64,000 nucleotides of DNA from the IMG/VR virus record IMGVR_UViG_3300033977_000108, positions 1 to 64,000 of that record; one strand, 5' to 3'. Of this stretch, positions 33,641 through 49,753 are shown piece after piece (within the stretch, counting starts at the first letter, position 1; the number at the start of each line of letters is the position of its first letter). The notes under the pieces are model-generated. The model was given only the letters and a program-made list of their open reading frames with translations. It searched no databases and was not told the origin of the DNA. The position numbers were made by a program, and so were the translations under genes.

Positions 33641-33654
33641 CTATACTAACCAGG
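33641..33654 (+). promoter_or_regulatory. CTATACTAACCAGG motif copy 1 (putative late promoter)
   Basis: Exact copies at 40279 and 49456. Confidence 0.6.
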
Positions 33655-33657
33655 AGT

Positions 33658-33957
33658 GTGAAATGCCAAGCCTATCGCATAGCCAGCGCTAAAGAGCTGT
33701 ATTGTGATCCCTCCTCCCTGAATTGCTTCGACGATATCCGTATGTGTTATTGGAAGGAAGATGACGGGTGGTGGCTTTATATCCCTTATTGTGGCGCCGG
33801 GCGTCTGCATCTACACCAAGTAACCGAGCATGAAGACGGCACTATCACCGTCACCCCTTCTATCCGCATGACAGGCCATCACAACGGTCGGCCTGCCGCC
33901 CATCATGGCTATCTAATCAAAGGAATATGGGAGGGTTGTAATGATGATGGGGTGTAA
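33658..33957 (+). CDS. DUF6527-like metal-binding protein
   Basis: C...H...EDGTITVTPSI...HHGYLIKGIW. Confidence 0.6.
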   Translation: MKCQAYRIASAKELYCDPSSLNCFDDIRMCYWKEDDGWWLYIPYCGAGRLHLHQVTEHEDGTITVTPSIRMTGHHNGRPAAHHGYLIKGIWEGCNDDGV

Positions 33958-34170
33958 AATGGTGGCTCTCTTTGTAGCAGGCACTTTCATCTTCTTTATT
34001 CTCCTGGATGTTATCATCCAGAAGCTCAAGCATAAACTCTAAGTCGTTCTAATATCAGGACATTTTTTGTTTCGGGGGCCAAATTAGGCCATACTAACCA
34101 CGAGTAGAGATATCTAAAAGCAGAGTTGGATGCCCTAAAGAATAAATCTAACCCCGGCGCCGGATAAAAG

Positions 34171-34179
34171 TGATATAAT
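34171..34179 (+). promoter_or_regulatory. Extended -10 promoter
   Basis: TGATATAAT upstream of the phosphatase gene. Confidence 0.55.
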
Positions 34180-34211
34180 ATCCCTTGGTGCGATTATGGC
34201 TGTGACAAGGT

Positions 34212-34685
34212 GTGACTATGGCTGTGACAACGCTTTGGTACCCAGACGGCAACCAGCACTACATAGGGCGGATTATGGACCGCCTATTTGTATCTAACAT
34301 CCATACTGCTAGGGCTTTAGCCCAGATAAACCCTTTTGGTATCCGCTTCGTGGTCAATGCTACTATGTGGCCGGTAGACTTGCCGCCTGATATCCAGGTC
34401 ATAAAACTGGACCTAAAGGACGATGCGGCCATCCCAAAGGAAGTATTATATGCTACACTAGGCTGGATGCACGAAATGATAAAGTATGACCCTGTTCTTG
34501 TTAATTGCTGGGCCGGCCGGTCGCGCTCGGCAGCCATCGTTGCGGCTTATCTTTGCCGCTGCGGTATGGACTGGGAGGAAGCCGAGAGGTTCATAAAGGA
34601 CAAATGGGTAAAGACCAATATACATCCATTGGTGGCCGCCAGCGTAAGAGAAGCTGTGAATGAAATGGCAACAGCCGCGATATAA
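34212..34685 (+). CDS. Dual-specificity (CX5R) phosphatase
   Basis: GIRFVVN, LKDD, VLVNCWAGRSRSAAIVAAYL. Confidence 0.88.
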   Translation: MTMAVTTLWYPDGNQHYIGRIMDRLFVSNIHTARALAQINPFGIRFVVNATMWPVDLPPDIQVIKLDLKDDAAIPKEVLYATLGWMHEMIKYDPVLVNCWAGRSRSAAIVAAYLCRCGMDWEEAERFIKDKWVKTNIHPLVAASVREAVNEMATAAI

Positions 34686-34693
34686 GAGGAGTT

Positions 34694-35227
34694 ATGGAAA
34701 CAAAACTCAAGCAGAAACTGCCGCAACTTCCGAAGCGCGAGCCCACAGCGATTATAAAGCAATGGGTCTGGGAACTGGCTATTCGCGCGCAGAGCACCCT
34801 AATGACAGCCACCCGGGATTATGATGGCGCCACAAGGGATTGGCCTGGACGGCCTATTATAAGGGCTATCAGGGCAATAACCTTGATTAGCGCCGATCCA
34901 CGAGAGAATGACCCGAAACACCCGGCCTATGATCCGAATGCATTTTGTTCAGCACGGCTGGATGAATTAGACCACGCTTTCAAGGAGTTCCTACGGGGCG
35001 TGGAGCCGTTGACACTACATTTTTATGACCATCTAAAAGATGCTTGTGAGATAATTGGCTATAAGTACAAGAAAGACCCGAAAGTGGCGGATGCTTTTCG
35101 CCGGGGCTATGAGGCTATGTGCCATAAAATAGCCATGAATCCGGAAACCGAGGAGCAAATGGACGAGCGCCAAAACGAAGACAGAACGAAACGGCCCAAA
35201 CAGACTAATGTTGATCCGAAGATATAG
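34694..35227 (+). CDS. Conserved phage hypothetical protein
   Basis: W...L..R.QS.L..A.R..D...LHFYDHL..A.EIIGY pattern; SD GAGGAG. Confidence 0.75.
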   Translation: METKLKQKLPQLPKREPTAIIKQWVWELAIRAQSTLMTATRDYDGATRDWPGRPIIRAIRAITLISADPRENDPKHPAYDPNAFCSARLDELDHAFKEFLRGVEPLTLHFYDHLKDACEIIGYKYKKDPKVADAFRRGYEAMCHKIAMNPETEEQMDERQNEDRTKRPKQTNVDPKI

Positions 35228-35423
35228 CCAGCTGTATAGGCTATCTCTATGTTAAATGATGCTATAGATCCGAGCCAGTCTTGCGTAGGGAGCCACCTCC
35301 AGTCTGTGGGAGCAGCCAAAGCCCACAGCGTAGTACAGAGTCTCCAGCACCTCGACACGGCCGTTAAATTAGAATGGTTTATAAACTTGAATAGTTTAGT
35401 AAATTTGATCTGCGAGACAGGCT

Positions 35424-36083
35424 ATGATTCTAGTAAATTCAGAGTTCAATTCAAAAGGCTTCGGTATTAGCCTCCCTTTCAGGCCCCCGCGCCAACGCTC
35501 TTCCTTTGATCCCAACTATCCGTATGGACAGCCGCAGGAGATTGATTATAGTCTCTTGGACCAGGCTGGCGTGGAGTTGGTACAAGAGATGAATCGTCAT
35601 CCTTGGCTTGCTACGGTGGATTATTGTTCCGGGCACCCAAGCGACCGCCCGCCATCAGAAAATACACCAATCTCTATAGCCAGAGACGAGCTCGCTGCTC
35701 GCTTTATGCCTAATGCATTTAGATGGAATTATTGGGAAGAGATAAAGGGATGTATGGATGCCTATGTGGCTGGCAATAAGAGTAAAACAGATTATCTTAT
35801 AGCCAGAAATGGTCTAACCGAGCTTTCAAAGACTACACTGCGTATTGCTATGTTTGTAGGCTCTTTGAAGCCTTTTATATACTGGATGCGGCTGGTTTTT
35901 ATGGGCATTTCCGCGGCTTTTCTTGGCCTACCAGAATACGAGATGCCAAAACTCACGCTAAATCCAATGAAGTGTGCGAAGCATGAATTGAATTTCATCT
36001 TTGAGTTTGAATACTTTGGGGTGGCGCACCGCCAGGTTGTTCATGATATTATGCTGGACGCCTTGCGTGAAATCCCCCTATAA
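35424..36083 (+). CDS. Hypothetical protein with TYW3-like N-terminal signature
   Basis: LDQAGVELVQEMNRHPWLATVDYCSGH resembles D..I..LV..LN......T..SCSG(R/H). Confidence 0.5.
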   Translation: MILVNSEFNSKGFGISLPFRPPRQRSSFDPNYPYGQPQEIDYSLLDQAGVELVQEMNRHPWLATVDYCSGHPSDRPPSENTPISIARDELAARFMPNAFRWNYWEEIKGCMDAYVAGNKSKTDYLIARNGLTELSKTTLRIAMFVGSLKPFIYWMRLVFMGISAAFLGLPEYEMPKLTLNPMKCAKHELNFIFEFEYFGVAHRQVVHDIMLDALREIPL

Positions 36084-36091
36084 GGTATAAT
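36063..36091 (+). promoter_or_regulatory. Sigma70-type promoter, leaderless start at 36098
   Basis: TTGCGT-17 nt-TATAAT with ATG 6 nt downstream. Confidence 0.7.
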
Positions 36092-36097
36092 AAATAC

Positions 36098-36565
36098 ATG
36101 GACCAGCAACAAATAAGCAACATCGTTAGTTCCGCTATTTCAGCAAACTTGCCAGCAGCCAATCTTTCGGCTGCTTTCGTCGGTCAGGTTGGGGAGGATT
36201 ATCAATTTACTGTATCCCCGATGCCTTTCACAACGGGGAATTCTACTACAGGCCCAATCCCACCACCTGCGACCACCTGGTATGTTATAACCACGCCCAT
36301 TCTTACAACTATGGGTGGTGCAGCTCAGAATGGTATGTGGTTACCTCCTAGCCCAGCGCCTCTACCCATAGACTCGCCTGTGCCTATGACACCGGAGCAA
36401 CTACAACAGCTTTATGAGATGCTCAAGCAACCGGTAATTATAGGAGATAAGGAACTGGAAAGGGCTGCTAAACAGGAACTACAGCGCGAGCCGACCCAAG
36501 AAGAGATGGATGAAATAAAAAGGATGATACTCGACCGACGAGATAATGGTGAACGGATTCTATAA
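36098..36565 (+). CDS. Pro/Thr-rich protein with C-terminal PxQEE motif
   Basis: C-terminus EPTQEEMDEIKRMILDRRDNGERIL. Confidence 0.7.
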   Translation: MDQQQISNIVSSAISANLPAANLSAAFVGQVGEDYQFTVSPMPFTTGNSTTGPIPPPATTWYVITTPILTTMGGAAQNGMWLPPSPAPLPIDSPVPMTPEQLQQLYEMLKQPVIIGDKELERAAKQELQREPTQEEMDEIKRMILDRRDNGERIL

Positions 36566-37095
36566 TGTCAGATATGGACTACAAGACGCCTCCTGGATGC
36601 GTACCAAAGGATGCCTATTTTCCCAATGTAATGAGCATAGTGACGGAATCGGGGAAAATGGAATACATTAAAGGCCCTGGGGTGGGGAATCCTCCGATGA
36701 ATACTTCCCATTGGGGACCAAAGGGAATTACACACCTAGCTGATTACGCAAATCCAGTGAATACTTCCCATATCTATGAGTATTGCAGCATCTGGAGACC
36801 AGCGGGACTTACAAGCTCAGCTGATTATTTAGGTCCAGCCGGAGTGACAGGCTACACAGGACCAGTTGGTGTTACTGGTTCCTTAGGTCAAACCGGAATG
36901 ATGGGATCAATAGGACCAGTTGGTGTTACTGGTACAGAGGCCTGGTTTTCTGAGATCGTATTTGAGGAAGTTTCTATAGATAAGGCGCCAGCAGGAGATA
37001 GCGGAGTGCTTGAATACATCCCATCTCAGGAAGAACTGGAAACTATACGGAGGGACATACTTATCAGGCAGTTAGACGATGAGAGATTGATTTGA
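36565..37095 (+). CDS. Protein with short collagen-like repeat and C-terminal PxQEE motif
   Basis: GPAGVTGYTGPVGVTG...; C-terminus IPSQEELETIRRDILIRQLDDERLI. Confidence 0.7.
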   Translation: MSDMDYKTPPGCVPKDAYFPNVMSIVTESGKMEYIKGPGVGNPPMNTSHWGPKGITHLADYANPVNTSHIYEYCSIWRPAGLTSSADYLGPAGVTGYTGPVGVTGSLGQTGMMGSIGPVGVTGTEAWFSEIVFEEVSIDKAPAGDSGVLEYIPSQEELETIRRDILIRQLDDERLI

Positions 37096-37901
37096 TGTTA
37101 GAGGATAAGCCAATACGAAGCTCTCCCGCCGAGACAGGTATTCAGCCGGCGCCAGAAGCCCCACCTTTAGACGCTTTGTTCAAAGCGCCGGCACCTGCCC
37201 CAGACCCAGAGCCAAAACCACCCTCTGATGACCTGACAGCTATTGTACCTATTGGTGTGCCCAAGGACTTATTGAAGCTATTGCCTATGGCAGAATTGAA
37301 TCTGTCTCCTGAACAGGCGGCTATTGTCGCGCGTTACCATGAAGCCAATGTGGTTCTTGGGGCCGCAGGCCAGATACTTATTTGTTCCGAAGCCTGCCCG
37401 TTCAAAAAGCGCTGTCCGCTCTATAAAATAGGCAAGGCTCCCTTCTGTTATCCATGTCCCTTTGAAGCGAACTATGCCGTAGAACGCTTCGCCGCTTGGT
37501 TGAAAGTCATTGTTCCGCCAGGTCAGCACATGACCGAGACCGAGCGTTCAACAATCGCAACATTGACTTATTTAGACATAGACGAATTGCGTTGTCGCAA
37601 CATCTTAGCCGACGCCGAGAATGCCAAGCTAACATCCTTAGTTGTCAGGGACTTAGACATAGAAACCAAGACGCCCCTGGCCTATGAAGAAGTAATAGCC
37701 GCCAACTCAGAAAGACTAAGCAAAATCCTCTATGAGAGGATGACCATCCTCAACGCTTTCGAGCTAACCCCAAGAGAAAAGACCCGCAAGAACAAATTCG
37801 CAAAGAAGACCGGCAGCGACCTGGCATCTAGACAATCCGCGGCAGCCGATAGAATAAGACAGACATCTATCGACGCCGAGATTGTCGAAGAGTCAGAATA
37901 A
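37092..37901 (+). CDS. Cys-cluster helical protein (candidate terminase small subunit)
   Basis: CSEACPFKKRCP..CYPCPFE; basic C-terminal helix; TerS assignment rests on position only. Confidence 0.45.
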   Translation: MMLEDKPIRSSPAETGIQPAPEAPPLDALFKAPAPAPDPEPKPPSDDLTAIVPIGVPKDLLKLLPMAELNLSPEQAAIVARYHEANVVLGAAGQILICSEACPFKKRCPLYKIGKAPFCYPCPFEANYAVERFAAWLKVIVPPGQHMTETERSTIATLTYLDIDELRCRNILADAENAKLTSLVVRDLDIETKTPLAYEEVIAANSERLSKILYERMTILNAFELTPREKTRKNKFAKKTGSDLASRQSAAADRIRQTSIDAEIVEESE

Positions 37902-40261
37902 TGCCACTTTTAGCTTTCACTTCACGTTTTCTCAAAGCCAATCCGACCTTTATAAAGGACATTACAGGTGTGCCTATTCAATTCCCGGGCTTGCCGGAAA
38001 GTGGAGAGGCTCAGCGCCGTCGCAGGCAATATACGGATTTTGGTTCTGGATGGCAGGGTTTCCTAAAACAAGAGGGAGTTAACGAGAAGAAAACAAAGAG
38101 GAAAAAAGCAGGGAAATCGCTCATAAGGATTGCTGCTGAGCTTAATGCGCTGCAGGTAGCTCTTTTTCCTCTGGAATCCGCAATGTCTGCGGCTATGTTT
38201 CTACAAAATCGGCCTTTTTTCAAGTTGCTATTTGATTGGAGAAAGGTCGGAAGCGAAGAAGGTAAGATAGCTTGGACGCAACTTGCTTCGCAGCATTATG
38301 GTTTGGATAGGAAGGCAAACTTATATCCTAGTGCTTTTGGTGGCCTTGAAACTTCCAATTTAATTGAAACTGGTAAATATAAACCTTATGTCAGTTTTCT
38401 AAGAAAGTTCTCACAATGGAACTATCGTTTACTTGGCGGTAATTATGCATACCGCGGTGTGCTAGGAAAACAAGCCGAGGACATATTACAGTCTGTTGAG
38501 AAAATAGGCAAGGCCACTGTTGATTTGAATGCTTTATCGGCTTGGTCAACTAATCCGGTGGTGGCAGGTCGGTTTGCTGCGAGTTCCAATCCAGATCCAG
38601 CGCTCAGTTGGTTGGCTACGGATGCTGGTGTTGTAATAAAGCGCCGTGTATCTGCGAAAGATGTGTGGTTTTTCTCTCCAACAATTGGTGGTTCTCCATC
38701 CGAAGTAGTAGTTGGGACTGCAACTGGTAAGATAGAAGTTACGGCTAAAGATATATTCAAACTGCCACGCGGAAGTGCAGAAGCGCCGTTCGGTGTATTC
38801 GGCCCTACATTTTATAAAGATGCTATGCGATGGAAGCTGCATCTTTGGGGAGATTGGAATCCAAGAAGTCTAGGATTTGCTCACATTTTACCGACGGCTA
38901 TTGTTGCCGGAGCCGCGTATTTCTTGTATAAGCACGGCAGGAACAAATCTCTCAACGAAATAGAAGCATTATCACACGGTGGTGAGTCTGCAAGTTCAAG
39001 ACGTAAGCATTCTGACTTTGGATCGGGATGGCGTGGATTATTAGAGGCATTAGCCACACGTGGTAGAATTGCATTGAATTTAGGTCTAACGGGACCTACA
39101 GGTTTAACTTACACAGTAAAAGAATTGGATGCCTTGAGACTGGCTCAGAGCCTGGCAATTAGACGCAGTGGTCTTTCAGCAGCTAGAATCCAGCGTGTTT
39201 CAAAAGATATTCTGAGATTAGCCCCAAGTCAGTTCTCTAATATAAGCGAAATAGAAGCTATACGACCTAATAGGTTGGGCTATGAAAGGATTAGGGCTCT
39301 AAACAGATGGTCACGCGCAACAGGAATGCCTGGTATTTTATTGAATGAAATACAAATGAAGGCCATGACCCCAGGTACGGTAGCAGAAATACTGAGACAC
39401 GAAGAAATACATGCTGCCCAATTTGCCGCCTATGGACATCCATTCTTTGCAAAACTAAGGAAGGAAACCGGTGGTATTCTTAATGAATTGATCTATGCTG
39501 TCCAACAGCCAAAGGCACAGGCTTATGCTCGCAAACAGGCAGGATTCATGTCACGGGGAAGAGCGGAGATGCCATGGATACCTAAGCTAGACCCAGAACG
39601 CATGGCTGAGGACATCTTAGTTCGATATGTGGATCTCACAAGCTCTTTTTACACACGACAAGGCATTAATCTTATAGAATCTAAGCAGTTCGGGACGTTG
39701 AATAGGATGCTTGAATCCGAGCCTATTGCTTATCATTTCCAGTCGAATCCACAAATAATGAAAGAGATGGAAAAAGCTGGTATAGAAACTACCAGAACTG
39801 CAACGCAGAAACTGAGACATAGCCTGCAGGAAAAGGGGATTGCCCCTCAACTTAGACGTAGATTGACAGATTTCGGCTCCGGCTGGCAAGGCATTTTACG
39901 CGCGGTTAAAGGCTTTCGGCAAGAAGGCGTGGTCTTCAAAGTACATCCTGAGAACTTCCTGCGCAAAGTCGGCGGCAATGTAGGAGTAAAAAGAAGCGTA
40001 ATAGAGGAACTTAAAGACAAGCTGCTCAGAGGAATACAGCTGGACCCAGGAGAGATACATTTTGATGAGTTTGGCAATGTGATAGGAGCCGAGGGACGGC
40101 ACCGGGCAACGGCTTATATGGAACTGGGCAGACAGATGCCTGTCCGTCGCATGGTAAGAGCTTCTGACATCATGCGCACTGGAGAGGGCTATGATGCAAC
40201 TACTATGCTTTCACGGCGGGTCCATGTGAGAGGTTCAAGGGAAATGTCCCACGCCCTGTAA
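37901..40261 (+). CDS. Modular polyvalent-like protein: ART-like, HExxH zincin and ParB-like domains separated by DFGSGW repeats
   Basis: YRG..SAWSTNPVVAGRFA..SEVVV; ILRHEEIHAAQ; AEGRHRATAY; DFGSGW at aa 46, 372 and 657. Confidence 0.75.
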   Translation: MPLLAFTSRFLKANPTFIKDITGVPIQFPGLPESGEAQRRRRQYTDFGSGWQGFLKQEGVNEKKTKRKKAGKSLIRIAAELNALQVALFPLESAMSAAMFLQNRPFFKLLFDWRKVGSEEGKIAWTQLASQHYGLDRKANLYPSAFGGLETSNLIETGKYKPYVSFLRKFSQWNYRLLGGNYAYRGVLGKQAEDILQSVEKIGKATVDLNALSAWSTNPVVAGRFAASSNPDPALSWLATDAGVVIKRRVSAKDVWFFSPTIGGSPSEVVVGTATGKIEVTAKDIFKLPRGSAEAPFGVFGPTFYKDAMRWKLHLWGDWNPRSLGFAHILPTAIVAGAAYFLYKHGRNKSLNEIEALSHGGESASSRRKHSDFGSGWRGLLEALATRGRIALNLGLTGPTGLTYTVKELDALRLAQSLAIRRSGLSAARIQRVSKDILRLAPSQFSNISEIEAIRPNRLGYERIRALNRWSRATGMPGILLNEIQMKAMTPGTVAEILRHEEIHAAQFAAYGHPFFAKLRKETGGILNELIYAVQQPKAQAYARKQAGFMSRGRAEMPWIPKLDPERMAEDILVRYVDLTSSFYTRQGINLIESKQFGTLNRMLESEPIAYHFQSNPQIMKEMEKAGIETTRTATQKLRHSLQEKGIAPQLRRRLTDFGSGWQGILRAVKGFRQEGVVFKVHPENFLRKVGGNVGVKRSVIEELKDKLLRGIQLDPGEIHFDEFGNVIGAEGRHRATAYMELGRQMPVRRMVRASDIMRTGEGYDATTMLSRRVHVRGSREMSHAL

Positions 40262-40278
40262 ATCAAAGAAATCGCAGA

Positions 40279-40292
40279 CTATACTAACCAGG
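40279..40292 (+). promoter_or_regulatory. CTATACTAACCAGG motif copy 2 (putative late promoter)
   Basis: Intergenic, 15 nt upstream of the 40308 ATG. Confidence 0.65.
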
Positions 40293-40307
40293 CAGAGAAG
40301 GTGACAT

Positions 40308-40964
40308 ATGCCAGCATTTGCTTCTTTAACTAGAGCTTTTGGACAGTTTCGTGGGTTATTCAATGACATTGGTGCAGCTGCATCTGCCGCGGGTCGAGAT
40401 CTGCTCACTTCAACCAGAGTCGCAAAGTCTTCCACTATTGCAGATATGGAGCCGTTCTTGGCAAGGGCGGTGGGCACACCAACCCGTGCCAATATATTGG
40501 GCGCAGCGAGAGGCATGGGACGCACAATCTGGGGGAACCCAGCAACACGTACTATGGCCGTCGGCGCTGGTGCGGGCGCGGGAATCGGTGGTCTATACGG
40601 CCTGAGTTCTGATAGACATCCCTATTTAAAGGGCTATGTGGGCTCGAACCTGGGTGCGCTTGGAGGACTCACAGCGGGTGCTGCGTTTGCTGGACGTGGG
40701 GGCATGGCAGCTGCCGCAAGACTCGGTTTTGGAGCACGGCACGTTGGAGCGGCTGCCGAGACTATAGGGCAAATGGGTTTTGATTTTGCTGCCGCTGCCA
40801 GGGCGGGGCGTGTAGGTATACCACCTATCCAACCGTTTCAGATGGGCTTCACCTTCGGTCAATATGGCATGCATGTACCAGGAGCCCCTCGAACGGCTCC
40901 GGGCTTATGGGGTAGCACCGTAAATAGGCTTGGGAATATAGTTGGACGCATGCGAGGCTTATAA
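40308..40964 (+). CDS. Gly/Ala-rich glycine-zipper protein (candidate ejection/pilot protein)
   Basis: GAGAGAGIGGLYG, GSNLGALGGLTAGAAFAG. Confidence 0.65.
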   Translation: MPAFASLTRAFGQFRGLFNDIGAAASAAGRDLLTSTRVAKSSTIADMEPFLARAVGTPTRANILGAARGMGRTIWGNPATRTMAVGAGAGAGIGGLYGLSSDRHPYLKGYVGSNLGALGGLTAGAAFAGRGGMAAAARLGFGARHVGAAAETIGQMGFDFAAAARAGRVGIPPIQPFQMGFTFGQYGMHVPGAPRTAPGLWGSTVNRLGNIVGRMRGL

Positions 40965-42417: not shown

Positions 42418-42418
42418 C

Positions 42419-42661: not shown

Positions 42662-42837
42662 TGCAGCAATGGGTAGACATCAACAGATACATGGATGTAT
42701 CTGAAGACGAAATATATGTTATATATTTGCAGCGCTATGCTCATTGTCGGCTAGGATACGAGGTAAGCGTTTTACGAGAGGGGCCTCCCCGAATATGGCG
42801 GTGGTCCTTGAAATGGATTGAAGTAATCGAGGAGTAA
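42661..42837 (+). CDS. Hypothetical protein (58 aa)
   Basis: Own translation MQQWVDINRY...; TAATG coupling. Confidence 0.5.
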   Translation: MQQWVDINRYMDVSEDEIYVIYLQRYAHCRLGYEVSVLREGPPRIWRWSLKWIEVIEE

Positions 42838-42839
42838 AT

Positions 42840-43451
42840 ATGCCATTCGATCAGAATTTCAGCAGTCAACCACCTTATGCCGGGAGCGGTTCGCTCGGGC
42901 CCACGCCGCCAAATGTAACATTACCGGCTACACAAGATTATCCTGTGCCGCCTAATGTATCAAATTTGCCTTATAATCCGCCAGATTTACCAGAAGGTTT
43001 TGCCAATGAAGGCGAGACCTATTTCCCAACCACAAGTGCGGTATATGGAATTCCTCTGCAATGGAAATCGTCCGACCTTCCTTCGGAGGGTGGTGGATAT
43101 GCAGAAGCAATCAAGTTAGTTGACAAGGCCTCTTCTAATACCACCAGTAACCCGGCAGCCATTGGTGCACGCGGCGTACAGGTTATCGTTCAATTCTTTC
43201 CTACTATGTCTGGCGCTTATAGTTTGACGGCAGCAGCCATGTCTTGTAATGTTGCTTTGTATACTTACAATCCAGAGACCAGCGTGACCACAGAAGTTAC
43301 TTCATGGCTCGGCGTAACGCCAGGCGATGACTTGAATGATATGTTTGTCGGCAATCTGGAAGAGGTAGACCTAAATGGACTGCCTTTATCAATAAGTGTG
43401 TCTAGTATTGTGGGAGGCAGCGTTTCGGTATATGTCGTTCCGCTTTCCTAA
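42840..43451 (+). CDS. Hypothetical virion structural protein
   Basis: SD GAGGAG; Pro-rich N-terminus, beta-rich C-terminus. Confidence 0.65.
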   Translation: MPFDQNFSSQPPYAGSGSLGPTPPNVTLPATQDYPVPPNVSNLPYNPPDLPEGFANEGETYFPTTSAVYGIPLQWKSSDLPSEGGGYAEAIKLVDKASSNTTSNPAAIGARGVQVIVQFFPTMSGAYSLTAAAMSCNVALYTYNPETSVTTEVTSWLGVTPGDDLNDMFVGNLEEVDLNGLPLSISVSSIVGGSVSVYVVPLS

Positions 43452-45403
43452 TGGAAACAGCGAGAGCCAGTTTTGAGCACCAGATGATAGAACAAGAATT
43501 CCTTGCCCCAGTCATAAAACGAAGCGAAAAAGACCCAGGCCTTATTCGCCGGATGCAAAATCCTATCTGCAAAGCCTGTCATGCAGAATACCAGAAGAAA
43601 TATCCAGGTTCTCCGTTTAAAATAATCTGCAATGGTATCCCCGATGAGCAGGATTTCAAAGAGGCCTCTGAAAAGACGGGTATGCCTTATGAACAGGTTC
43701 GGGAGGTGATGGATTTACAATACTGGACTGAAAGGCACATGAAGGTAACCGATGAAAGAGGCGATGTAATATCTTTCCGTGCCCGCGATTATCAAGTGCC
43801 TATTCTCCGCTGTACGGCGAATAGGAAGGTCAATCGCTGCGGTCGCGGATTAGGAAAAACACTCCTTAGCACTTTTGAAGAATTGCATTGGGCATTGAAC
43901 AATAAGAACTTTCCTATCCTTGTTGTCTCCCCCGCCAAAGCCCAGGCCAAGAAATGGTATGATGACATTCTGTGGGCAGCGGACCAGGATCCCGAGATTT
44001 CAGAATCCATTATACAAAGGCTACAGCAGCCTTTTTATCTCATCCGTTTCTCTAATGGCTCAAGTATCTCTATTTTTACGGCCGGTTCAGAATCAGGTCG
44101 CGGTGCCGGTTCAATCCGTTCTCAAAGCCCTAGGCGCGTCCGATTAGAGGAACAGGACGGCTTGAATGAAGCCGATTACAAGCCCATACAGCCCTTATTC
44201 CGCCGCTATAAAAACAGCACCGTCCATGGACAAAGTACCCCATGTGGAGACCGGAGCTTCTTTTGGAAGATGTGCTGCCGGTTCAAGGACTATAAGGAAT
44301 TCCATGTTCCCATTACGCGGCACCCGGACTGGGGTAAGGAAATGGAGGAAGCCTGCCGGAGAGAAGCTGGGACTTACATCAACTTCCAGCATGAATTCCT
44401 GGCAGAATTCGGAGACCCAGAGGAGGGCGTATTCAAAGCTCGGTTCATTGATGCCTCGCGTCGGCCCTATTACTACAAAGATTGTAAGCATGTCCCCGGA
44501 CGCGCTTACTTCCTCGGTGTAGATTGGAATGGCGAAGGCACTGGTATGCGGGCGCGCGTTCTTGAGTTTAACCCGGAGGATGAAATCCGCCGTGTAGTGG
44601 ATACCGCCCTGGTATCAGGCGAAAAATCCACCACTATGGATGTTTTATACACCATACGCAATCTAAACCGAAAGTGGCACTGTGAAGAGATTTATCTTGA
44701 TTATGGCTATGGAGCATTCCAAGCCGGCATGTTGAGGGAAATGGGCAATCCGGCGATAATAACTTCGCCTGATGACTTGCGTCTCCGATTTATCAAGACT
44801 GTGGATTTCGGCGCCAATCTGAAAACCAATAAGCTAATCCCAAAGCGAGGTCGTCCAAAGTTCCTGAAGATAGACGAGGAAAAGAAGGCTACCAAGCCAT
44901 TCATGGTTGAAAGTGCGGTGATGGTATTAGAGAATGATAAGTTCAAGTTTGCCGAATCTGATGCCACCCTCGATTCCGAGTTCCGAGCCTATAAGGTCAA
45001 GACATGGAGCCTTCATGGCCACGCCAATACTTATACAGGCGGCAAAATAGGAGACCACGACCTTACGGCTACAATGCTGGCCATGATGGCTATTGATTTG
45101 AAGTATGGTGCCCTTTCAGCCACGGCGCCTGTTCATCAACCTGTGATGCGTAATGTTTCCACAATGACGCAGGATGGTATGCCAGTGCGCGCGCGTGCTG
45201 ATTCTGTTACGCCCCGGGCCGAAGGTAATCCAGATTCTCCATTTACACCATCCAAGCAGCCAAGAATAGTAGCGGCAACCAGGCAAGCCGTTGTAGTCGT
45301 ACCGCCCAGGGCCTCGCCGACTTCGCGTGCAGGGCGTTCAGTATTTCCTTCACGCACGCGATTACGCTCACCTTTTGTCCGCGCGCCTTATAGGGGATTC
45401 TAA
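43451..45403 (+). CDS. terL: Terminase large subunit
   Basis: Adenine-binding RDYQ, Walker A GRGLGKT, coupling motif QSTP, FxxEFLAEF, RNase H-like LGVDWN, YLDYG, GDHD. Confidence 0.92.
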   Translation: METARASFEHQMIEQEFLAPVIKRSEKDPGLIRRMQNPICKACHAEYQKKYPGSPFKIICNGIPDEQDFKEASEKTGMPYEQVREVMDLQYWTERHMKVTDERGDVISFRARDYQVPILRCTANRKVNRCGRGLGKTLLSTFEELHWALNNKNFPILVVSPAKAQAKKWYDDILWAADQDPEISESIIQRLQQPFYLIRFSNGSSISIFTAGSESGRGAGSIRSQSPRRVRLEEQDGLNEADYKPIQPLFRRYKNSTVHGQSTPCGDRSFFWKMCCRFKDYKEFHVPITRHPDWGKEMEEACRREAGTYINFQHEFLAEFGDPEEGVFKARFIDASRRPYYYKDCKHVPGRAYFLGVDWNGEGTGMRARVLEFNPEDEIRRVVDTALVSGEKSTTMDVLYTIRNLNRKWHCEEIYLDYGYGAFQAGMLREMGNPAIITSPDDLRLRFIKTVDFGANLKTNKLIPKRGRPKFLKIDEEKKATKPFMVESAVMVLENDKFKFAESDATLDSEFRAYKVKTWSLHGHANTYTGGKIGDHDLTATMLAMMAIDLKYGALSATAPVHQPVMRNVSTMTQDGMPVRARADSVTPRAEGNPDSPFTPSKQPRIVAATRQAVVVVPPRASPTSRAGRSVFPSRTRLRSPFVRAPYRGF

Positions 45404-45825
45404 TGATAGTACAAGAAGCGCAAGCTATAGCTACCCTGAACTCTTATCACCTGCCGCTAAATGTTCAGATAATACAAAAAGCAACTGATTGGCAAGGCAG
45501 GCAATATCTTGCCTATTGGGCCATGAAAGAATGTATTCGGGAAGACTTTCTTGGCATCGCAGATTGGTTTGATCAGATTACAAGATATTCAGCGGCCAAT
45601 CCAGAAGCGTTATCGGGACCATATAAAGTCATCTCACCACCTAACCCGAGATGGGAACTTGCTAATGCTATGACTATTTTGACCGAAGCCCCCATGCCAA
45701 ATACCAATCCTCCTTTTCTTGTAGATATCAATTTGGCAGTAATGACTGGCTTTGGCGATGTGTTTGTTATAACCCCTGATCAGATGATGGGAAATCAATC
45801 TGAACTCGGCGGTCTGATAGGATAA
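45403..45825 (+). CDS. Hypothetical protein
   Basis: TAATG coupling to terL. Confidence 0.65.
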   Translation: MIVQEAQAIATLNSYHLPLNVQIIQKATDWQGRQYLAYWAMKECIREDFLGIADWFDQITRYSAANPEALSGPYKVISPPNPRWELANAMTILTEAPMPNTNPPFLVDINLAVMTGFGDVFVITPDQMMGNQSELGGLIG

Positions 45826-45859
45826 TGAGTTTCTATACTTATCTTTGGAGCAGAAATAG

Positions 45860-47530
45860 ATGTCTTGGGAGCCTATCACATTTACATATATCCCGCCACT
45901 CACTGTGCCCAGCCCGCCAGTGCAGCCTCAAAGTGTAGCTTCTTCTCCTTCCACAGCCCCAGCTACTTTAGGAGGTTCTGTATTTCAAAATAGCGGGGCC
46001 GGACAGCTAATCCAACGCTTCCAAGCCTTGTCGGCCACTTCTGATTATTTGACATCCATAGTGAATACTCTTTGTGACACTTTGAACATAGCAATAAATC
46101 CGGGTACAGATTTCAATGTTGCCACAGCCCTGGGTCGCCTATATAAGTCCACTACGCCAGTCCCAGGAATAGACATGGTTATGTATAATAACCTATTGCA
46201 GGCAGAATTGGGGATTACCAGGATTGATATAGTGCAAAGCCCAAATTCTACACAGATGGTATTGCCAATACAAAGGGATGATCTCGGCGTAGTAAATAGG
46301 GCCTTTGAGAATGCTTTGGTCAACGACGGCACTTATACGCATCAGCTTCCTTTGCTATTACGCCCGCTGGCCGGGGATAAACTGCTTTTTGATTATACAA
46401 CCACGGAGCTTCAGAATTATCCTATCCTGACAACCAATAATCCCTCGGCTACCGATGTATCCCCTGGAATCAGCGATAAATTGAATAATCTTTGTGACCG
46501 CTATCAGACTTTATATGCTTCAAATTATACCATGATGATAGCCCCCGATCCAATTTCTGCCGGGGCGCCTACTATCATAGCTGCGTTGACGCCCAGTATC
46601 AATGCTCCGGTTAATGCTTTGACTTCAGCCGGCAATGCCATTTCCAGCACTTTGACTAAAACTACCTCTGCTATAGCAGGAGTGGAGAGCACAGTTATCT
46701 CTGAGGTTTCCAAAGTCTTGACACCCGCCAGTGAGATAGTATTTGCTTTGGGGTCCATTGTAGCTACACTCACGGCACTGAAAGCCATCTTCTTTGCTAC
46801 TTCAATGACGAACATTATATCCAGTCTATCCTTTATATTACCTCGTCTGGCGGTTGAGCTGGTTATGAATATGCTGCATGTTGATCGTTTTATGCAGCTG
46901 GCTACGACGGAAGTGGCAGTTATAAATTCAAAGCTACAGAATGCTATTGATGCTACTTCTCAATTATACAGCACGCTTCTGGGTATAGGCTTGACGCCGA
47001 TTCTTCTGAAACATCAATTGGATACTATTGCTTCTTTGACCAAGCAACAGTCTATATCCAAGCAGCCAATGCCGAATTTGAATGAGACCGGTATCCCCAG
47101 TGAATTGTTGCAAGTAGGGTCAATTATAAATTGGGCTGGGAATGAGACGCAGCGCTATGCCCAGGATATAGAACTAAACTGTCAGAAAATCCTTGATAGT
47201 CGGCTCAATTCCAGCGGCGATATGACGGAAATAATGTCCAGCCTGAAATCCGTAGAGGCGCTCATTGCTATGGCGCAATGCATTTTGAATGTGCAAGGTT
47301 CTATGGCAAGCGTGCCTACTACAGCCGTTGGGATAACCAGTTCTTTACAGGCCTTTGGTCAAGTAATGAATGAGATGAACACTCCCGCTGGCGCCTCTTA
47401 TACAGTAGTCGGCAATCAGCTAGTAATCACGCCGCCTAATATACCCGCCCCTTCTTCAAATGTGGCCAATGTTTTGACCAGTGGAGGAGCCACGGTAGGA
47501 AATACGAAATACACGGCGAGTTCAGCATAA
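45860..47530 (+). CDS. Ser/Thr/Ala-rich virion structural protein
   Basis: 556 aa, located between terL and portal. Confidence 0.6.
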   Translation: MSWEPITFTYIPPLTVPSPPVQPQSVASSPSTAPATLGGSVFQNSGAGQLIQRFQALSATSDYLTSIVNTLCDTLNIAINPGTDFNVATALGRLYKSTTPVPGIDMVMYNNLLQAELGITRIDIVQSPNSTQMVLPIQRDDLGVVNRAFENALVNDGTYTHQLPLLLRPLAGDKLLFDYTTTELQNYPILTTNNPSATDVSPGISDKLNNLCDRYQTLYASNYTMMIAPDPISAGAPTIIAALTPSINAPVNALTSAGNAISSTLTKTTSAIAGVESTVISEVSKVLTPASEIVFALGSIVATLTALKAIFFATSMTNIISSLSFILPRLAVELVMNMLHVDRFMQLATTEVAVINSKLQNAIDATSQLYSTLLGIGLTPILLKHQLDTIASLTKQQSISKQPMPNLNETGIPSELLQVGSIINWAGNETQRYAQDIELNCQKILDSRLNSSGDMTEIMSSLKSVEALIAMAQCILNVQGSMASVPTTAVGITSSLQAFGQVMNEMNTPAGASYTVVGNQLVITPPNIPAPSSNVANVLTSGGATVGNTKYTASSA

Positions 47531-47539
47531 GGAGTTTCT

Positions 47540-49753
47540 ATGCCACGCACCAAGAAAATGACTGAAAAAGAGGAACAGAAAGCGCAGCGTTTAGACCGCC
47601 TAGCTCGCTTCAAGCGCGGTAAATTTGTCTCTCCTATGGCTGTAGCAGCCGTGCCGAAATCAAAAGGCCTGTTGCCAGAGCCGAGAATGGATAACTGGGG
47701 AGTGCGGGCTATTCAGAAGCCCCTTACTTGGTCGCCCCTTACCGAACGGATAAGACTAGCCACGCGTATAAAAGATAAAGCGGCTACCCAAGAACAGAGA
47801 GACAAGACTGGTGGTTTTTACTTGAAAGATGTAGGCTCTTCTGACCTGCCAAAAGTATTTGCCAAGGTCGCCGCCAAAATACAGAACGAACAGGATTACA
47901 TGAACTCGTACTGGGGCTGGATTGGCATTATACAGCCGGAGTATGAGCTCCTAGAACCATGGACCATCTTTGATACCGAAGCTTATCTGCGTGTTGCCAC
48001 GGAGCGGAAACAAAGCCTGATGTTTAGGAACGGCTTCAAAGTCATGGGCGATAATGAGACCTTCCGCCAATACATAGAGAAGCGATTTGCCCAGATTGCC
48101 TATTTCATGGATCTCACGACCGAGAACTTCTTCAAGAGGATACTGATCCAACTTTTGGTCTCTTCAAACTGTATAGTATTGAAAATACGTGATGAGAATG
48201 CTTCCGGCGGCACGGCTAACGACAAGAATAAGAATAAGAAACCTGTGGCTGCCTATACCATTGTCCCATCCCATACTATTTATCCCTACTTGGATGGCAA
48301 GGGCCGAATAGAGAAGTGGCGCAGGTTTTTCGCCGACGGCCGCACATTTGAAGATTATCCGGTAGAAGATATCATTCATTTTTACTGGGACAAAAAGGAA
48401 GGCCACATCTTTGGCACTCCTCGGACAGTTGCTATCCGCGATGACATTTTGGCTTTGCGCCGGCTGGAAGAGAATGTGGAACTGTTGATGATACATCACC
48501 TGTTCCCATTATTTCATGTGGCAGTGGGCACCCCAGACCAGCCCGCGGATTACGAAGTGGAAGGCGTCAGCGAGGTAGATTTCGTCCGTAATGCCATTGA
48601 ACAGATGCCCAAAGAAGGTATGCTGGTCACCGATGAGCGCGTGCGGGTGGAAGCCGTAGGTGCCAAAACCACTGCCCTGGAATATGACAAGATTGTCCAG
48701 CACTATAAGACCCGTGTTTTCACAGGGTTAGGGGTAAGCGGCGTGGATATGGGAGAGGGGGATACCTCTAATAGAAGTACCGCTGAAACAGTATCCCAGA
48801 ACTTGAAGGATAGCGTAAAAGCTGACCTGGACTGGTTCTGTGGGCAGATTCAGATGTTGATGATAAAGGAATTCTTCCAAGAGGCGCCATTTGACCTTAG
48901 CGTTCAGAATGCCGTTGCTGATGTCCATCTGGCGTTCTCTGAGATAGATGTGGATGGGATGATAAAGACCGAGAACCATCATCTCAATCTGTATAACAGC
49001 CATTTGATTGATGAGACCGAAGCCCGTCAAAGGCTCGGCCGCCAGCCATTGACTGAAGAGCAGCGCAAGAATACGCATTATCATCGCCATATCCTGGATT
49101 TGGCTCTCAGGACGGCCAAGGCGCGCGCCCAATATGCCTATGAATACGCTATTCCAAGAGGCGAAGGCACGCCTGGCGGCAAGAGTACAGGAGGTGGCGG
49201 CAAAGGCTCGCCAGCAAAGAAAGCCACGCCCCGGTACAAAAGTCCAAAAGTGGCCGAGCAGCCTGAAAATCAGCATGGAAGGAACCTAGACCCTCATCGT
49301 GCTAGGTCCAGTACAAGTCTAGAATCCCTCCGCGATCTTCTTTTGGCCCTGCGCGCTGCTTTGGATAAGGAAGGCCGGCTGACCTTGGATGAATGGAGAA
49401 ACAATGCCGAGAAGGCTATCTATCTCTATTTCAGTGATTTGATGGGTGAGAACGCCTATACTAACCAGGAGCGAATGGAACAAGTCCGAGATAGGGCTCT
49501 GGCACTTATCCGTGAAACACATAATCCAGACCTGATTTCGGTGATTTTAGATGATGCGGAAGTAGATCTTCTGCAAGAGGAAACTGAGACACATGGCGAA
49601 CAAGAAACAGATGCCCGACCCGCTATTGAACCTGCACAAGGCGCCATTACCGCAGGTGATTCAGAACCTGGGCAAAGCCTCGGGGATGAATCCACAACAA
49701 CGGAAGGAACGAGTTCTGGAGTTGGCACTGGGGCCGAAACGAACGACTCCTAA
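47540..49753 (+). CDS. Portal protein
   Basis: Y...DIIHF....G..FG.P.., HYK..VF.GLGVS..D.G.G..SNRSTA; position between terL and protease. Confidence 0.85.
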   Translation: MPRTKKMTEKEEQKAQRLDRLARFKRGKFVSPMAVAAVPKSKGLLPEPRMDNWGVRAIQKPLTWSPLTERIRLATRIKDKAATQEQRDKTGGFYLKDVGSSDLPKVFAKVAAKIQNEQDYMNSYWGWIGIIQPEYELLEPWTIFDTEAYLRVATERKQSLMFRNGFKVMGDNETFRQYIEKRFAQIAYFMDLTTENFFKRILIQLLVSSNCIVLKIRDENASGGTANDKNKNKKPVAAYTIVPSHTIYPYLDGKGRIEKWRRFFADGRTFEDYPVEDIIHFYWDKKEGHIFGTPRTVAIRDDILALRRLEENVELLMIHHLFPLFHVAVGTPDQPADYEVEGVSEVDFVRNAIEQMPKEGMLVTDERVRVEAVGAKTTALEYDKIVQHYKTRVFTGLGVSGVDMGEGDTSNRSTAETVSQNLKDSVKADLDWFCGQIQMLMIKEFFQEAPFDLSVQNAVADVHLAFSEIDVDGMIKTENHHLNLYNSHLIDETEARQRLGRQPLTEEQRKNTHYHRHILDLALRTAKARAQYAYEYAIPRGEGTPGGKSTGGGGKGSPAKKATPRYKSPKVAEQPENQHGRNLDPHRARSSTSLESLRDLLLALRAALDKEGRLTLDEWRNNAEKAIYLYFSDLMGENAYTNQERMEQVRDRALALIRETHNPDLISVILDDAEVDLLQEETETHGEQETDARPAIEPAQGAITAGDSEPGQSLGDESTTTEGTSSGVGTGAETNDS
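49456..49469 (+). promoter_or_regulatory. CTATACTAACCAGG motif copy 3 (internal to portal, upstream of the head genes)
   Basis: Exact 14-mer, 300 nt before the protease gene. Confidence 0.5.

What the first reader, a model, noticed from the sequence alone, without database searches (positions are those of the whole stretch)
33641..49469. Exact 14-mer CTATACTAACCAGG three times on the late strand: candidate phage-specific late promoter
Seen: exact copies at 33641, 40279 (both just upstream of gene starts) and 49456 (inside the portal gene, before the head genes). Near copies lie at 34089 (CCATACTAACCACG) and 12061 (GGATACTAACCAGG, antisense to early genes). Three exact 14-mers in 64 kb are far beyond chance. 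The TATACTAA core recalls a -10-only late promoter like T4 TATAAATA. The recognising factor is unknown; the two-barrel RNAP and the HTH protein are candidates.
Basis: partly seen in the sequence, partly recalled or inferred. Interest (0 to 1): 0.6.

Follow-up and report, generated by a model that had tools for sequence, protein, structure and literature searches.

The report
Conserved phage promoter motif, jumbo phage
A 13-14 base word (C-Y-ATACTAACCAGG) sits in front of the virion-gene blocks of an uncultured 205-kb peat phage and its distant relatives, always pointing the way the genes run, and is most likely the phage's own promoter, though no transcript data exist to prove it and which polymerase or factor reads it is open.

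Summary
The window is the first 64 kb of a complete 204,633-bp jumbo phage with terminal repeats, from a peat metagenome.

**Copies.** The whole genome holds nine copies of C[CT]ATACTAACCAGG, scoring 25-30 bits against 16 or less for everything else.
- All nine point the same way as the genes downstream.
- Seven of nine lie between genes.
- They mark both outer edges of the late (virion) region.
- The near copy at 12061 does not score as a member.

**Relatives.** Syntenic phages at 25-70% protein identity carry the same word at matching places.
- One such place is inside the 3' end of the portal gene, read in the same frame.
- Each lineage has shifted the 3' half in all its copies together: AACCAG, AATCAG or AANNAG.
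- One relative has a copy 8 nt before a tRNA cluster.

**What is absent.** There is no -35-like conservation upstream and no shared RNA fold.

**Reading.** This is a one-element, phage-specific promoter starting near its 3' end (about 0.75). Three candidate readers were confirmed or found:
- a YonO/QDE-1-like two-barrel RNA polymerase (28482-31754);
- a GerE-type HTH protein (28217-28489);
- a sigma-70-like factor outside the window (127700-128881).

I lean to the sigma-like factor with host core polymerase, because TATACT looks like a -10 element. The YonO-like polymerase is close behind. No RNA data exist for this phage.

The parts
33641..33654 (+). Motif copy 1 (CTATACTAACCAGG). It lies in the divergent gap between the leftward early block and the rightward late block, and is the first element of the late strand.
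   Evidence: 30.1 bits. Relatives G002, G010 and contig L041/L042 have a copy at the same divergent junction.
34089..34102 (+). Motif copy 2, a variant (CCATACTAACCACG). It is intergenic, about 110 nt before ORF 34212-34685.
   Evidence: 25.4 bits, well above the noise ceiling of 18.6.
40279..40292 (+). Motif copy 3. It is intergenic, 15 nt before the ATG at 40308.
   Evidence: 24.9 bits. There are likely positional counterparts in G002 (50123) and G010 (156288).
49456..49469 (+). Motif copy 4, inside the 3' end of the portal gene and 313 nt before the head-gene block (764-aa protein, then the major capsid protein at 53565-54911).
   Evidence: 29.1 bits. It is read as Y-T-N-Q in the same frame in G000 and G002, as a conserved island in a poorly conserved stretch. 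G010 has TAT ACT AAT CAG there, so its lineage-specific C-to-T change is synonymous. G011 also has a copy 303 nt before the same gene.
12061..12074 (+). Near copy (GGATACTAACCAGG), antisense inside an early gene. It is doubtful and probably not a member.
   Evidence: 12.6 bits, within the shuffle range. Its exact 12-base core is nevertheless unlikely by chance (about 0.02 per genome). Not followed in relatives.
28482..31754 (-). P0001, 1090 aa: a single-chain two-barrel RNA polymerase of the QDE-1/RDR/YonO kind, with invariant D517, D519 and D520 (GDxDD). Candidate reader of the motif.
   Evidence: - No Pfam or PHROG hit on its own.
- 61 remote relatives found.
- The family profile hits the QDE-1 catalytic barrel (E 0.005).
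- 4 of 28 family members hit Pfam RdRP.
- The AF2 model (pLDDT 76.8) matches RDR2/QDE-1 at E 4e-13 and the phage P23-45/P74-26 non-virion polymerases at E 2e-6 to 1.5e-5.
28217..28489 (-). P0062, 90 aa: a GerE/LuxR-type helix-turn-helix protein whose start overlaps the polymerase stop by 8 nt. Candidate DNA-binding partner.
   Evidence: - Pfam GerE E 3.3e-7, 30.3 bits against a cut-off of 23.5.
- In relative contig L041 the gene in the same place is Sigma70_r4 (E 3.8e-10).
- The pairing is not universal. No such ORF follows the polymerase gene in G010. In G002 the ORF in that place was never scanned for domains.

Best explanation
The word c-YATACTAAyCAG-g is a one-element promoter specific to this phage family. 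It has a sharp 5' edge and no -35 partner. I predict that transcription starts at or within a few bases of its 3' end (A12 to A15), so that the ribosome-binding site which often overlaps or follows 'CAGGAG' lies at the very 5' end of the message.

In this genome nine copies switch on the virion, packaging and late accessory blocks:
- seven on the + strand between 33.6 and 95.7 kb;
- two on the - strand at 127.6-127.75 kb, heading a convergent block that holds endonuclease VII, a tRNA and glycosyltransferases.

In relatives the same word also precedes a primase-helicase gene and a tRNA cluster.

**Who reads it (inferred).** My first choice, about 0.45-0.5 given that it is a promoter, is the phage's own sigma-70-like factor (393 aa, genome 127700-128881, outside the window) loaded on host core polymerase. 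On that reading it takes TATACT as a -10 element, as T4 gp55 takes TATAAATA. My second choice, about 0.3, is the phage's YonO-like two-barrel polymerase, with or without the small HTH protein.

**Shown:** the copies, their orientation, placement, conservation and concerted change, and the identity of the three proteins.
**Inferred:** that transcription starts there, where exactly, and who reads it.
For: 1. **A discrete family.** Nine sites score 24.9-30.1 bits, the next best 16.3, and shuffles reach at most 18.6. It is the most repeated 12- and 14-mer of the genome outside one repetitive gene.
2. **Orientation and placement.**
   - 9/9 are co-oriented with downstream genes (P 0.002).
   - 7/9 are intergenic against 7.8% intergenic DNA (P 6e-7).
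   - G002 gives 6/6 co-oriented and 5/6 intergenic.
   - G010 gives 11/12, and the exception faces a tRNA cluster.
3. **Genome layout.** Genes run leftward in 1-33.5 kb, rightward in 33.6-118.8 kb and leftward in 118.8-204.6 kb. Copies sit at the divergent junction (33641) and at the start of the convergent late block (127751, 127613). A divergent gap must hold a promoter, and this is the only recognisable conserved word in it.
4. **Downstream genes are late functions.** These include head genes, a virion protein plus the tail sheath, the baseplate wedge, endonuclease VII and glycosyltransferases.
5. **The motif search itself found relatives.** Seven of nine viral contigs holding the 16-mer are fragments of about 200-kb phages. 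Six of them were checked against this genome by tblastn and are syntenic at 25-70% protein identity. A capsid-protein search added 27 loci, including two 215-kb genomes.
6. **Found again de novo.** The top 12-mer of G010 is TATACTAATCAG (11 copies). In G011, CTATACTAAATA and TATACTAAATAG (5 copies each) tie for top 12-mer with a simple TCTTCT repeat.
7. **Matching positions across G000, G002, G010 and G011.** These are inside the portal 3' end, before the g73063 homologue, before the g95771 homologue and after the sigma-like gene.
8. **Concerted lineage-wide change.**
   - AACCAG in G000 and G002.
   - AATCAG in all 12 G010 copies, including a synonymous change inside the portal gene.
   - AANNAG in G011.
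   - AGCCAG twice in L045.
   
   This is the signature of a trans-acting reader.
9. **Translation is not needed.** One G010 copy ends 8 nt before tRNA-Gly, which heads a tRNA cluster.
10. **No shared RNA fold.** Eight of nine sites have z between -1.5 and +0.9.
11. **For the sigma reading.**
    - TATACT is 5/6 of TATAAT, with the two key bases (A at position 2, T at position 6) never varying in any listed site of G000, G002, G003, G007-G010, G011 or L045.
    - There is no upstream conservation in 32 sites.
    - The sigma-like family is real: Atlas score 0.95 to viral Sigma70_r4/r2 clusters, and 8/9 members hit Sigma70_r4 and 2/9 Sigma70_r2.
    - It is about 38% identical across lineages, while the polymerase is only 22-25%, yet the 5' half of the word is invariant.
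    - In G014 only TATACTA survives, 18-29 nt before start codons.
Against: - No transcript 5' ends exist. The only public run holding this DNA is the source peat metagenome.
- Fourteen contiguous near-invariant bases, including the stretch after the -10-like hexamer, is more than sigma-type promoters usually show. It resembles the promoters of phage-encoded polymerases.
- The sigma-like factor has a region 4, yet there is no -35 element.
- The polymerase gene co-occurs with the word in every lineage where it could be checked (G000, G002, G010, L041, L045). In SPbeta the homologous enzyme YonO is the late-gene polymerase (PMC5467207).
- Two of nine copies lie inside genes. One of them (127751) is followed by a strong hairpin (z -3.96) whose meaning is unknown.
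- No second motif was found that could serve whichever enzyme does not read this one.
Confidence: 0.75

Rival explanations
1. It is the same promoter function, but the reader is the phage's YonO/QDE-1-like single-chain two-barrel polymerase (P0001), alone or with the small HTH protein (P0062) as a specificity subunit. This is nested within the promoter reading and differs only in the enzyme.
For: - P0001 is a two-barrel polymerase.
- YonO of SPbeta transcribes that phage's late genes (PMC5467207).
- Other single-chain two-barrel phage polymerases use short DNA motifs next to the start site (P23-45 preprint).
- The polymerase operon lies back to back with the first motif copy in G000, G002, G010, L041/L042 and probably L046.
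- An HTH gene overlaps the polymerase stop here (GerE) and in L041 (Sigma70_r4).
- A run of 13-14 near-invariant bases is typical of phage-polymerase promoters.
Against: - The polymerase is only 22-25% identical between lineages that keep 10 of 12 core bases. T7-type polymerase and promoter pairs at similar divergence differ at many positions (my own knowledge).
- The conserved half is the part far from the start and the variable half is near it, the reverse of the T7/SP6 pattern.
- No HTH gene lies next to the polymerase gene in G010, and in G002 the ORF in that place was never scanned.
- The SPbeta yonN-yonK gap and phage 0305phi8-36, which is reported to encode a YonO-like enzyme, show no such word.
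Confidence: 0.3
2. It is an RNA-level element, not a start site. A sequence-specific processing or cleavage site, or a binding site for a protein on the message, would create or protect mRNA 5' ends just ahead of ribosome-binding sites.
For: Co-orientation with genes, placement just before start codons, and concerted change with a trans factor would all also be expected of an RNA site.
Against: - The first copy sits in a divergent gap with at most 130 nt available for an upstream promoter, and nothing else there is recognisably conserved.
- There is no shared fold.
- A copy 8 nt before a tRNA, where RNase P already makes the 5' end, needs no extra cleavage signal.
- Copies lie 246-335 nt from the next start codon inside the portal gene.
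Confidence: 0.08
3. It is a DNA or nascent-strand site for a regulator rather than a promoter. It could be an operator for the GerE-type HTH protein, or an ops/nut-like loading site for an antitermination factor on polymerase that started elsewhere.
For: - A GerE-type HTH protein is encoded in the window.
- Loading sites of the ops kind are about 12 nt, strand-specific and placed early in long operons (my own knowledge).
Against: - No promoter-like conservation appears anywhere within 45 nt upstream in 32 sites.
- The word is asymmetric, unlike typical dimeric GerE/LuxR boxes.
- Nine or more copies are spread through the operons, not only at their heads.
Confidence: 0.08
4. It is chance or a leftover of duplication, with no function.
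For: None beyond the weak result of the 3-mismatch test.
Against: - Simulations never give more than two copies of any 14-mer.
- The flanks are unrelated.
- The word is conserved in relatives whose flanks do not align.
Confidence: 0.01

Closest known systems
T4 late promoters (TATAAATA), read by the sigma-like gp55 on host core polymerase with gp33 and the sliding clamp (my own knowledge)
   Same: Both are a single AT-rich -10-type element with no -35. Both are phage-encoded-factor dependent and sit in front of virion genes. The element here contains TATACT, 5/6 of the -10 consensus.
   Different: This word is 13-14 bases long, with strongly conserved bases after the hexamer. The candidate factor (393 aa) has a region-4-like HTH that gp55 lacks. 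No homology to gp55 was tested or shown.
Promoters of phage sigma factors that use one extended -10-like word, such as phiEco32 gp36 (recalled from memory, not checked here)
   Same: A phage sigma with regions 2 and 4, yet promoters defined by one conserved word of about 9 bases near -10.
   Different: The sequence is different. There the extension lies upstream of the hexamer, whereas here it lies downstream. Neither the host nor the start site is known here.
SPbeta YonO and its single late promoter (PMC5467207)
   Same: The window encodes a polymerase of the same broad kind (single-chain two-barrel, RdRP-like). YonO transcribes late genes. The paper states that the promoter sequence recognised by YonO still has to be determined.
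   Different: YonO uses one mapped start for a whole late operon, whereas here there are nine or more copies. No similar word was found in the SPbeta yonN-yonK gap. P0001 and YonO are too distant for BLAST.
T7/T3/SP6-type promoters of single-subunit polymerases
   Same: A compact, highly conserved word next to the start, a purine-rich stretch after it, and lineage-specific variants.
   Different: No T7-like polymerase gene was detected (PF00940 gave no hit, though the controls rang nowhere). The word is shorter (13-14 against 23 bp). Here the conserved half is the 5' half.
P23-45 gp64 and gp96 two-barrel phage polymerases and their AT-rich and GC-rich promoter motifs (bioRxiv 10.1101/2022.12.01.518664)
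   Same: Single-chain two-barrel phage polymerases with short motifs just upstream of mapped starts. The P0001 model matches the gp64-type structures at E 2e-6 to 1.5e-5.
   Different: The motifs and phage family are different, and those starts were mapped experimentally.

Membership tests
-10-only promoter read by a phage sigma-like factor (T4-late type) | A -10-like hexamer with A at position 2 and T at position 6 | tested here: met
   The hexamer is T/C-ATACT. The A and T are invariant in 32 sites from 8 records and in 13 G011 sites.
-10-only promoter read by a phage sigma-like factor (T4-late type) | No conserved -35 element | tested here: met
   Information content is 0.36 bit or less at every position from -45 to -2 in 32 sites.
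-10-only promoter read by a phage sigma-like factor (T4-late type) | The phage encodes a sigma-family factor | tested here: met
   - P0063 scores 0.95 in the Atlas to viral Sigma70_r4/r2 clusters.
- 8/9 family members hit Sigma70_r4 and 2/9 hit Sigma70_r2.
- P0063 alone has no Pfam hit, and a PF04542 genome scan was blank, so its region 2 is very diverged.
-10-only promoter read by a phage sigma-like factor (T4-late type) | Start site 6-8 nt after the hexamer, dependent on host core polymerase | not testable with these tools
   No RNA run holds this phage, and the host is unknown.
Promoter of a YonO-like two-barrel phage polymerase | The phage encodes such a polymerase | tested here: met
Promoter of a YonO-like two-barrel phage polymerase | Polymerase gene and word co-occur across lineages | tested here: met
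   They co-occur in G000, G002, G010, L041/L042 and L045, with weaker cases in G011 and L046. The test is not discriminating, because the sigma-like gene co-occurs too.
Promoter of a YonO-like two-barrel phage polymerase | Polymerase-dependent start at the word | not testable with these tools
   This needs in vitro transcription or a knockout. No consensus for this enzyme class is known to compare with (PMC5467207).
T7-type single-subunit polymerase promoter | A T7-like polymerase gene is present | tested here: inconclusive
   PF00940 found nothing in the genome, but the same search rang in none of the control genomes either. No large ORF resembles one.
Intrinsic terminator or structured RNA element | A shared stem-loop at or around the word | tested here: not met
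   The folds of the nine sites differ. Eight have z between -1.5 and +0.9.
Translation-initiation element (extended ribosome-binding site or enhancer) | Always coupled to a start codon at a fixed short distance | tested here: not met
   Distances range from a few nt to 335 nt. One copy heads a tRNA cluster.

The most novel reading that the evidence does not exclude
The word is the first defined promoter consensus for the YonO/RdRP-like single-chain two-barrel polymerases of phages. It would be read with a small sigma-region-4/GerE-type HTH protein as a detachable specificity subunit, a minimal 'sigma-like' arrangement on a polymerase thought to resemble the ancestor of all multi-subunit polymerases.
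Probability: 0.25. Interest if true: 0.75.

Novelty: new member of a known kind. Interest (0 to 1): 0.5.

Why it matters
Phage-specific promoters are a familiar kind of element, so the motif itself is not a new principle. Three things make it useful.

1. **It defines the transcription map of a new phage family.** These are uncultured jumbo phages of about 200-215 kb, found in peat and other metagenome samples. They have no close relative among 50,697 deposited phage records.
2. **It makes an open question testable.** The family encodes both a YonO-like two-barrel polymerase and a very diverged sigma-like factor. The 2017 YonO paper (PMC5467207) states that the promoter recognised by YonO still has to be determined, and my two literature searches turned up no later answer. 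Here a crisp 13-base candidate and three named proteins can be combined in a simple in vitro transcription experiment.
3. **It works as a probe.** A 16-base search of a viral contig collection returned mostly relatives of this phage, so the word is a cheap way to find the family.

Tried and rejected
- **RNA evidence.** The look-up of sequencing runs found only the source peat DNA run.
- **Close relatives.**
  - megablast and tblastn of the window and P0001 against deposited phages gave nothing.
  - Only the portal gave distant hits, to 0305phi8-36, Acinetobacter ME3 and others.
  - Single-protein scans of viral contigs with the portal, P0001, P0010 and P0007 found nothing.
  - The polymerase alignments were too divergent for the search for related loci.
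  - The word search for P0001 found only itself.
- **Comparison with the one mapped YonO promoter.** The SPbeta yonN-yonK gap holds no similar word beyond chance. I could not place the published start coordinate in the phage record.
- **0305phi8-36.** It has no such word (fewer hits than the reversed control) and no P0063 homologue.
- **A second motif for the other enzyme.** Enriched words in upstream regions were only the ribosome-binding site and this motif. Inspection of 45 early-block upstream regions by eye showed nothing. A sigma-70 consensus scan of 31.5-50.5 kb was not above shuffles.
- **Complex prediction.** The polymerase (residues 49-962 of P0007) with its adjacent Sigma70_r4 protein from L041 gave no answer. 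This is not evidence either way.
- **Contigs set aside.** G001, G004 and G006 hold the 16-mer but share no proteins with this genome (only 15-kb parts of G001 and G006 were checked) and were set aside as chance or another lineage. G001 and G006 do have it intergenic, 7 nt before an ATG.

Full report
**1. The observation**

The pattern search confirms exact CTATACTAACCAGG at 33641, 40279 and 49456 on the + strand. It also confirms the near copies at 34089 and 12061.
- A fixed 14-mer is expected about 0.0005 times in 64 kb.
- In 40 Markov simulations of the window, no 14-mer occurred more than twice.
- The real window has three copies once the repetitive fibre gene at 58.4-64 kb is set aside.
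- The flanks of the copies do not align, so these are not duplicated segments.

**2. The genome around it**

The window is the first 64 kb of a 204,633-bp virus record with direct terminal repeats. Its only public sequencing run is a peat metagenome. Genes run in three blocks:
- leftward from 33.5 kb to 1;
- rightward from 33.6 to 118.8 kb;
- leftward from 204.6 to 118.8 kb.

The rightward block holds these virion genes:

| Gene | Coordinates |
|---|---|
| Terminase | 43451-45403 |
| Portal | 47540-49753 |
| Major capsid protein | 53565-54911 |
| Collagen-like fibre | 58464-64103 |
| Tail sheath | 73793-75631 |
| Baseplate wedge | 97236-98435 |

**3. The family of copies**

A weight matrix built from the sites separates nine members from everything else. 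The members score 24.9-30.1 bits, the next best hit scores 16.3, and the best hits of 20 shuffled genomes score 12.1-18.6.
- The + strand members are at 33641, 34089, 40279, 49456, 69572, 73026 and 95749.
- The - strand members are at 127613 and 127751.
- 12061 scores 12.6 and is probably not a member.
- The word is the most repeated 12- and 14-mer of the genome outside the fibre gene.
- Its 5' edge is abrupt. After it there is only a purine bias (A, G, n, G, r, a).

All nine copies point the way the downstream genes run (P 0.002). Seven of nine are intergenic, against 7.8% intergenic DNA (P 6e-7). One copy sits in the divergent gap that opens the late block. The two - strand copies open a convergent block that holds small coiled-coil proteins, endonuclease VII, tRNA-Met and glycosyltransferases. 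The word therefore brackets the late region.

**4. Relatives**

A 16-base search of viral contigs returned nine contigs. Seven are fragments of about 200-kb phages. Six of these were compared with this genome by tblastn, and they share syntenic proteins with it at 25-70% identity. A capsid-protein alignment then found 27 loci, among them two complete 215-kb genomes, G010 and G011. Several results follow.

- **The word is found again without prior knowledge.** The most repeated 12-mer of G010 is TATACTAATCAG (11 copies). In G011, CTATACTAAATA and TATACTAAATAG (5 copies each) tie for the top with a simple TCTTCT repeat.
- **Orientation and placement repeat.** G002 gives 6/6 co-oriented and 5/6 intergenic. 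G010 gives 11/12 co-oriented. G011 gives 12/13.
- **Positions match.**
  - The divergent junction next to the polymerase operon (G000, G002, G010, L041/L042).
  - Inside the portal 3' end (G000, G002, G010, G011).
  - Before the g73063 homologue and tail sheath (G000, G002, G010, G011).
  - Before the g95771 homologue (G000, G010, G011).
  - Just after the sigma-like gene (G000, G003, G010).
- **The portal copy is held at the DNA level.** The word is read Y-T-N-Q in the same frame in G000 and G002. It is the best-conserved island in a poorly conserved stretch, and all four synonymous positions are identical.
- **The 3' half changes in concert within each lineage.**
  - AACCAG in G000, G002, G003 and G007-G009.
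  - AATCAG in all G010 and G013 copies. The portal copy changes by a synonymous AAC to AAT.
  - AANNAG in G011.
  - AGCCAG twice in L045.
  - Only TATACTA remains in G014.
  
  A change shared by a dozen dispersed copies points to a trans-acting reader whose preference moved.
- **Relatives also use it elsewhere.** It lies in front of a DnaG-DnaB primase-helicase gene (G003, G005, G007, G009, G010). In G010 it ends 8 nt before tRNA-Gly, at the head of a tRNA cluster. So it does not depend on translation, and it is not strictly 'late'.

**5. What it is not**

- The nine sites share no RNA fold. Eight have z between -1.5 and +0.9. Only 127751 is followed by a strong hairpin.
- No position from -45 to -2 is conserved in 32 sites, so there is no -35 partner.
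- It is not a fixed-distance translation signal. Distances to the next start codon run from a few nt to 335 nt.

**6. Candidate readers**

- **The polymerase (28482-31754).** This 1090-aa protein has no Pfam or PHROG hit alone.
  - It has 61 remote relatives, with an invariant GDxDD (D517, D519, D520).
  - The family profile hits the catalytic barrel of QDE-1.
  - 4 of 28 members hit Pfam RdRP.
  - The model (pLDDT 76.8) matches RDR2/QDE-1 at E 4e-13 and the P23-45/P74-26 phage polymerases at E 2e-6 to 1.5e-5.
- **The HTH protein (28217-28489).** This 90-aa gene overlaps the polymerase stop and is a GerE-type HTH.
  - A relative has a Sigma70_r4 gene in the same place.
  - G010 has no such ORF there. 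In G002 the ORF in that place was not scanned for domains.
- **The sigma-like factor (127700-128881, outside the window).** This 393-aa protein looks like a very diverged sigma-70-family factor.
  - Its Atlas score is 0.95 to viral Sigma70_r4/r2 clusters.
  - 8 of 9 family members hit Sigma70_r4 and 2 of 9 hit Sigma70_r2.
  - It is about 38% identical across G003, G010 and G011. The polymerase is 22-25% identical across the same lineages.

**7. Mechanism**

I take the word to be a one-element promoter whose start lies at about A12 to A15. This is inferred. In several copies the ribosome-binding site GGAG begins at G13, with the start codon 6-8 nt later, so the start cannot be far downstream.

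- TATACT is 5/6 of the -10 consensus, and its two critical bases never vary.
- There is no -35 element.
- The invariant half is the hexamer half, while the part near the start drifts.
- The more conserved protein fits the more conserved half.

Against this stand three points:
- The run of invariant bases is long.
- The polymerase gene sits next to the first copy.
- In SPbeta, YonO is the late-gene enzyme.

I put the promoter reading at about 0.75. Within it, I give the sigma-like factor about 0.45-0.5 and the YonO-like polymerase about 0.3.

**8. Known systems and novelty**

The closest analogues are:
- T4 late promoters with gp55;
- phage sigma factors with single extended -10 words;
- T7-type promoters;
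- the unmapped promoter of YonO (PMC5467207);
- the motifs of the P23-45 two-barrel polymerases.

The word itself does not appear in the searched literature as a promoter. It is absent from SPbeta's relevant gap and from 0305phi8-36. I rate it a new member of a known kind.

**9. Limits**

- Gene calls outside the window are my own greedy ORF calls, so exact start codons are uncertain.
- No RNA data exist.
- The complex prediction gave no answer.

Noticed in passing
genome 127700-128881 (-), outside the window (L036:3700-4881): A 393-aa, very diverged sigma-70-family-like protein. It is conserved at about 38% in relatives, and a motif copy lies directly downstream of it in three lineages. It has no Pfam hit of its own.
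   Followed up: partly
window 58464-64000 (the gene runs to 64103): A giant 1,879-aa fibre-like gene with a collagen triple-helix stretch and a BclA C-terminal-like domain. It is full of short internal DNA repeats (TATACCGGCTA-type words), which dominate the repeated k-mers of the window.
   Followed up: no
genome 127700-127740 (-), just after motif copy 127751: A strong hairpin (GGAAGGATGCATGCCTTCC, z -3.96) lies between the two - strand motif copies, at the end of the sigma-like gene. It may be a terminator or attenuator between two tandem promoters.
   Followed up: no
window 12061-12074 (+): An exact 12-base core of the motif, antisense inside an early gene. It fails the weight matrix because of its first two bases. 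It is either an antisense start or chance (about 0.02 expected per genome).
   Followed up: partly
Bacillus phage 0305phi8-36, NC_009760.1, 144-212 kb (L118-L121): Eighteen copies of a small hairpin with the invariant centre CGTGCGAACG. All lie on one strand, all opposite to the local genes, and 15 of 18 are intergenic. On the gene strand each reads as a stem-loop followed by a T-run and TGTA. This looks like a family of terminators or hairpin signals in the early region of a cultured phage that is reported to encode a YonO-like polymerase.
   Followed up: partly
G011 (IMGVR_UViG_3300029908_000004) 3598, 41473, 44534, 104076: A second repeated word, CTATACTATATAATAG, occurs four times. It points against the surrounding genes and lies 16-28 nt before small ORFs. 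It shares the TATACTA start of the main motif and may be a second promoter class.
   Followed up: no
L040 (JGI 3300032173 contig, 8.7 kb): The closest homologue of the polymerase (P0002, 28-32% identity) lies on a contig next to efflux-pump genes (ACR_tran, OEP), with no motif copy. It may be a prophage or a bacterial copy of this enzyme family.
   Followed up: no
genome 137643-140027 (-) (L036:13643-16027): A single 794-aa protein joins an N6 DNA methylase domain to a type I specificity (S) domain. It lies next to the primase-helicase gene.
   Followed up: no
G010 65.5-70 kb (L076:5500-10000) compared with G000: The relative G010 carries a cluster of 13 tRNA genes. Scans of G000 from 64 to 204 kb found only three scattered ones (Met, Phe, Pro). 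The first 64 kb were not scanned.
   Followed up: partly
G001 and G006 (IMGVR_UViG_3300045988_028173 and _013312): Two contigs from phages of about 100 kb share no detected proteins with this genome in the 15-kb parts checked. They hold CCATACTAACCAGGAGG once each, intergenic and 7 nt before an ATG, with identical flanks. This is either chance or the same promoter word in another phage group.
   Followed up: no
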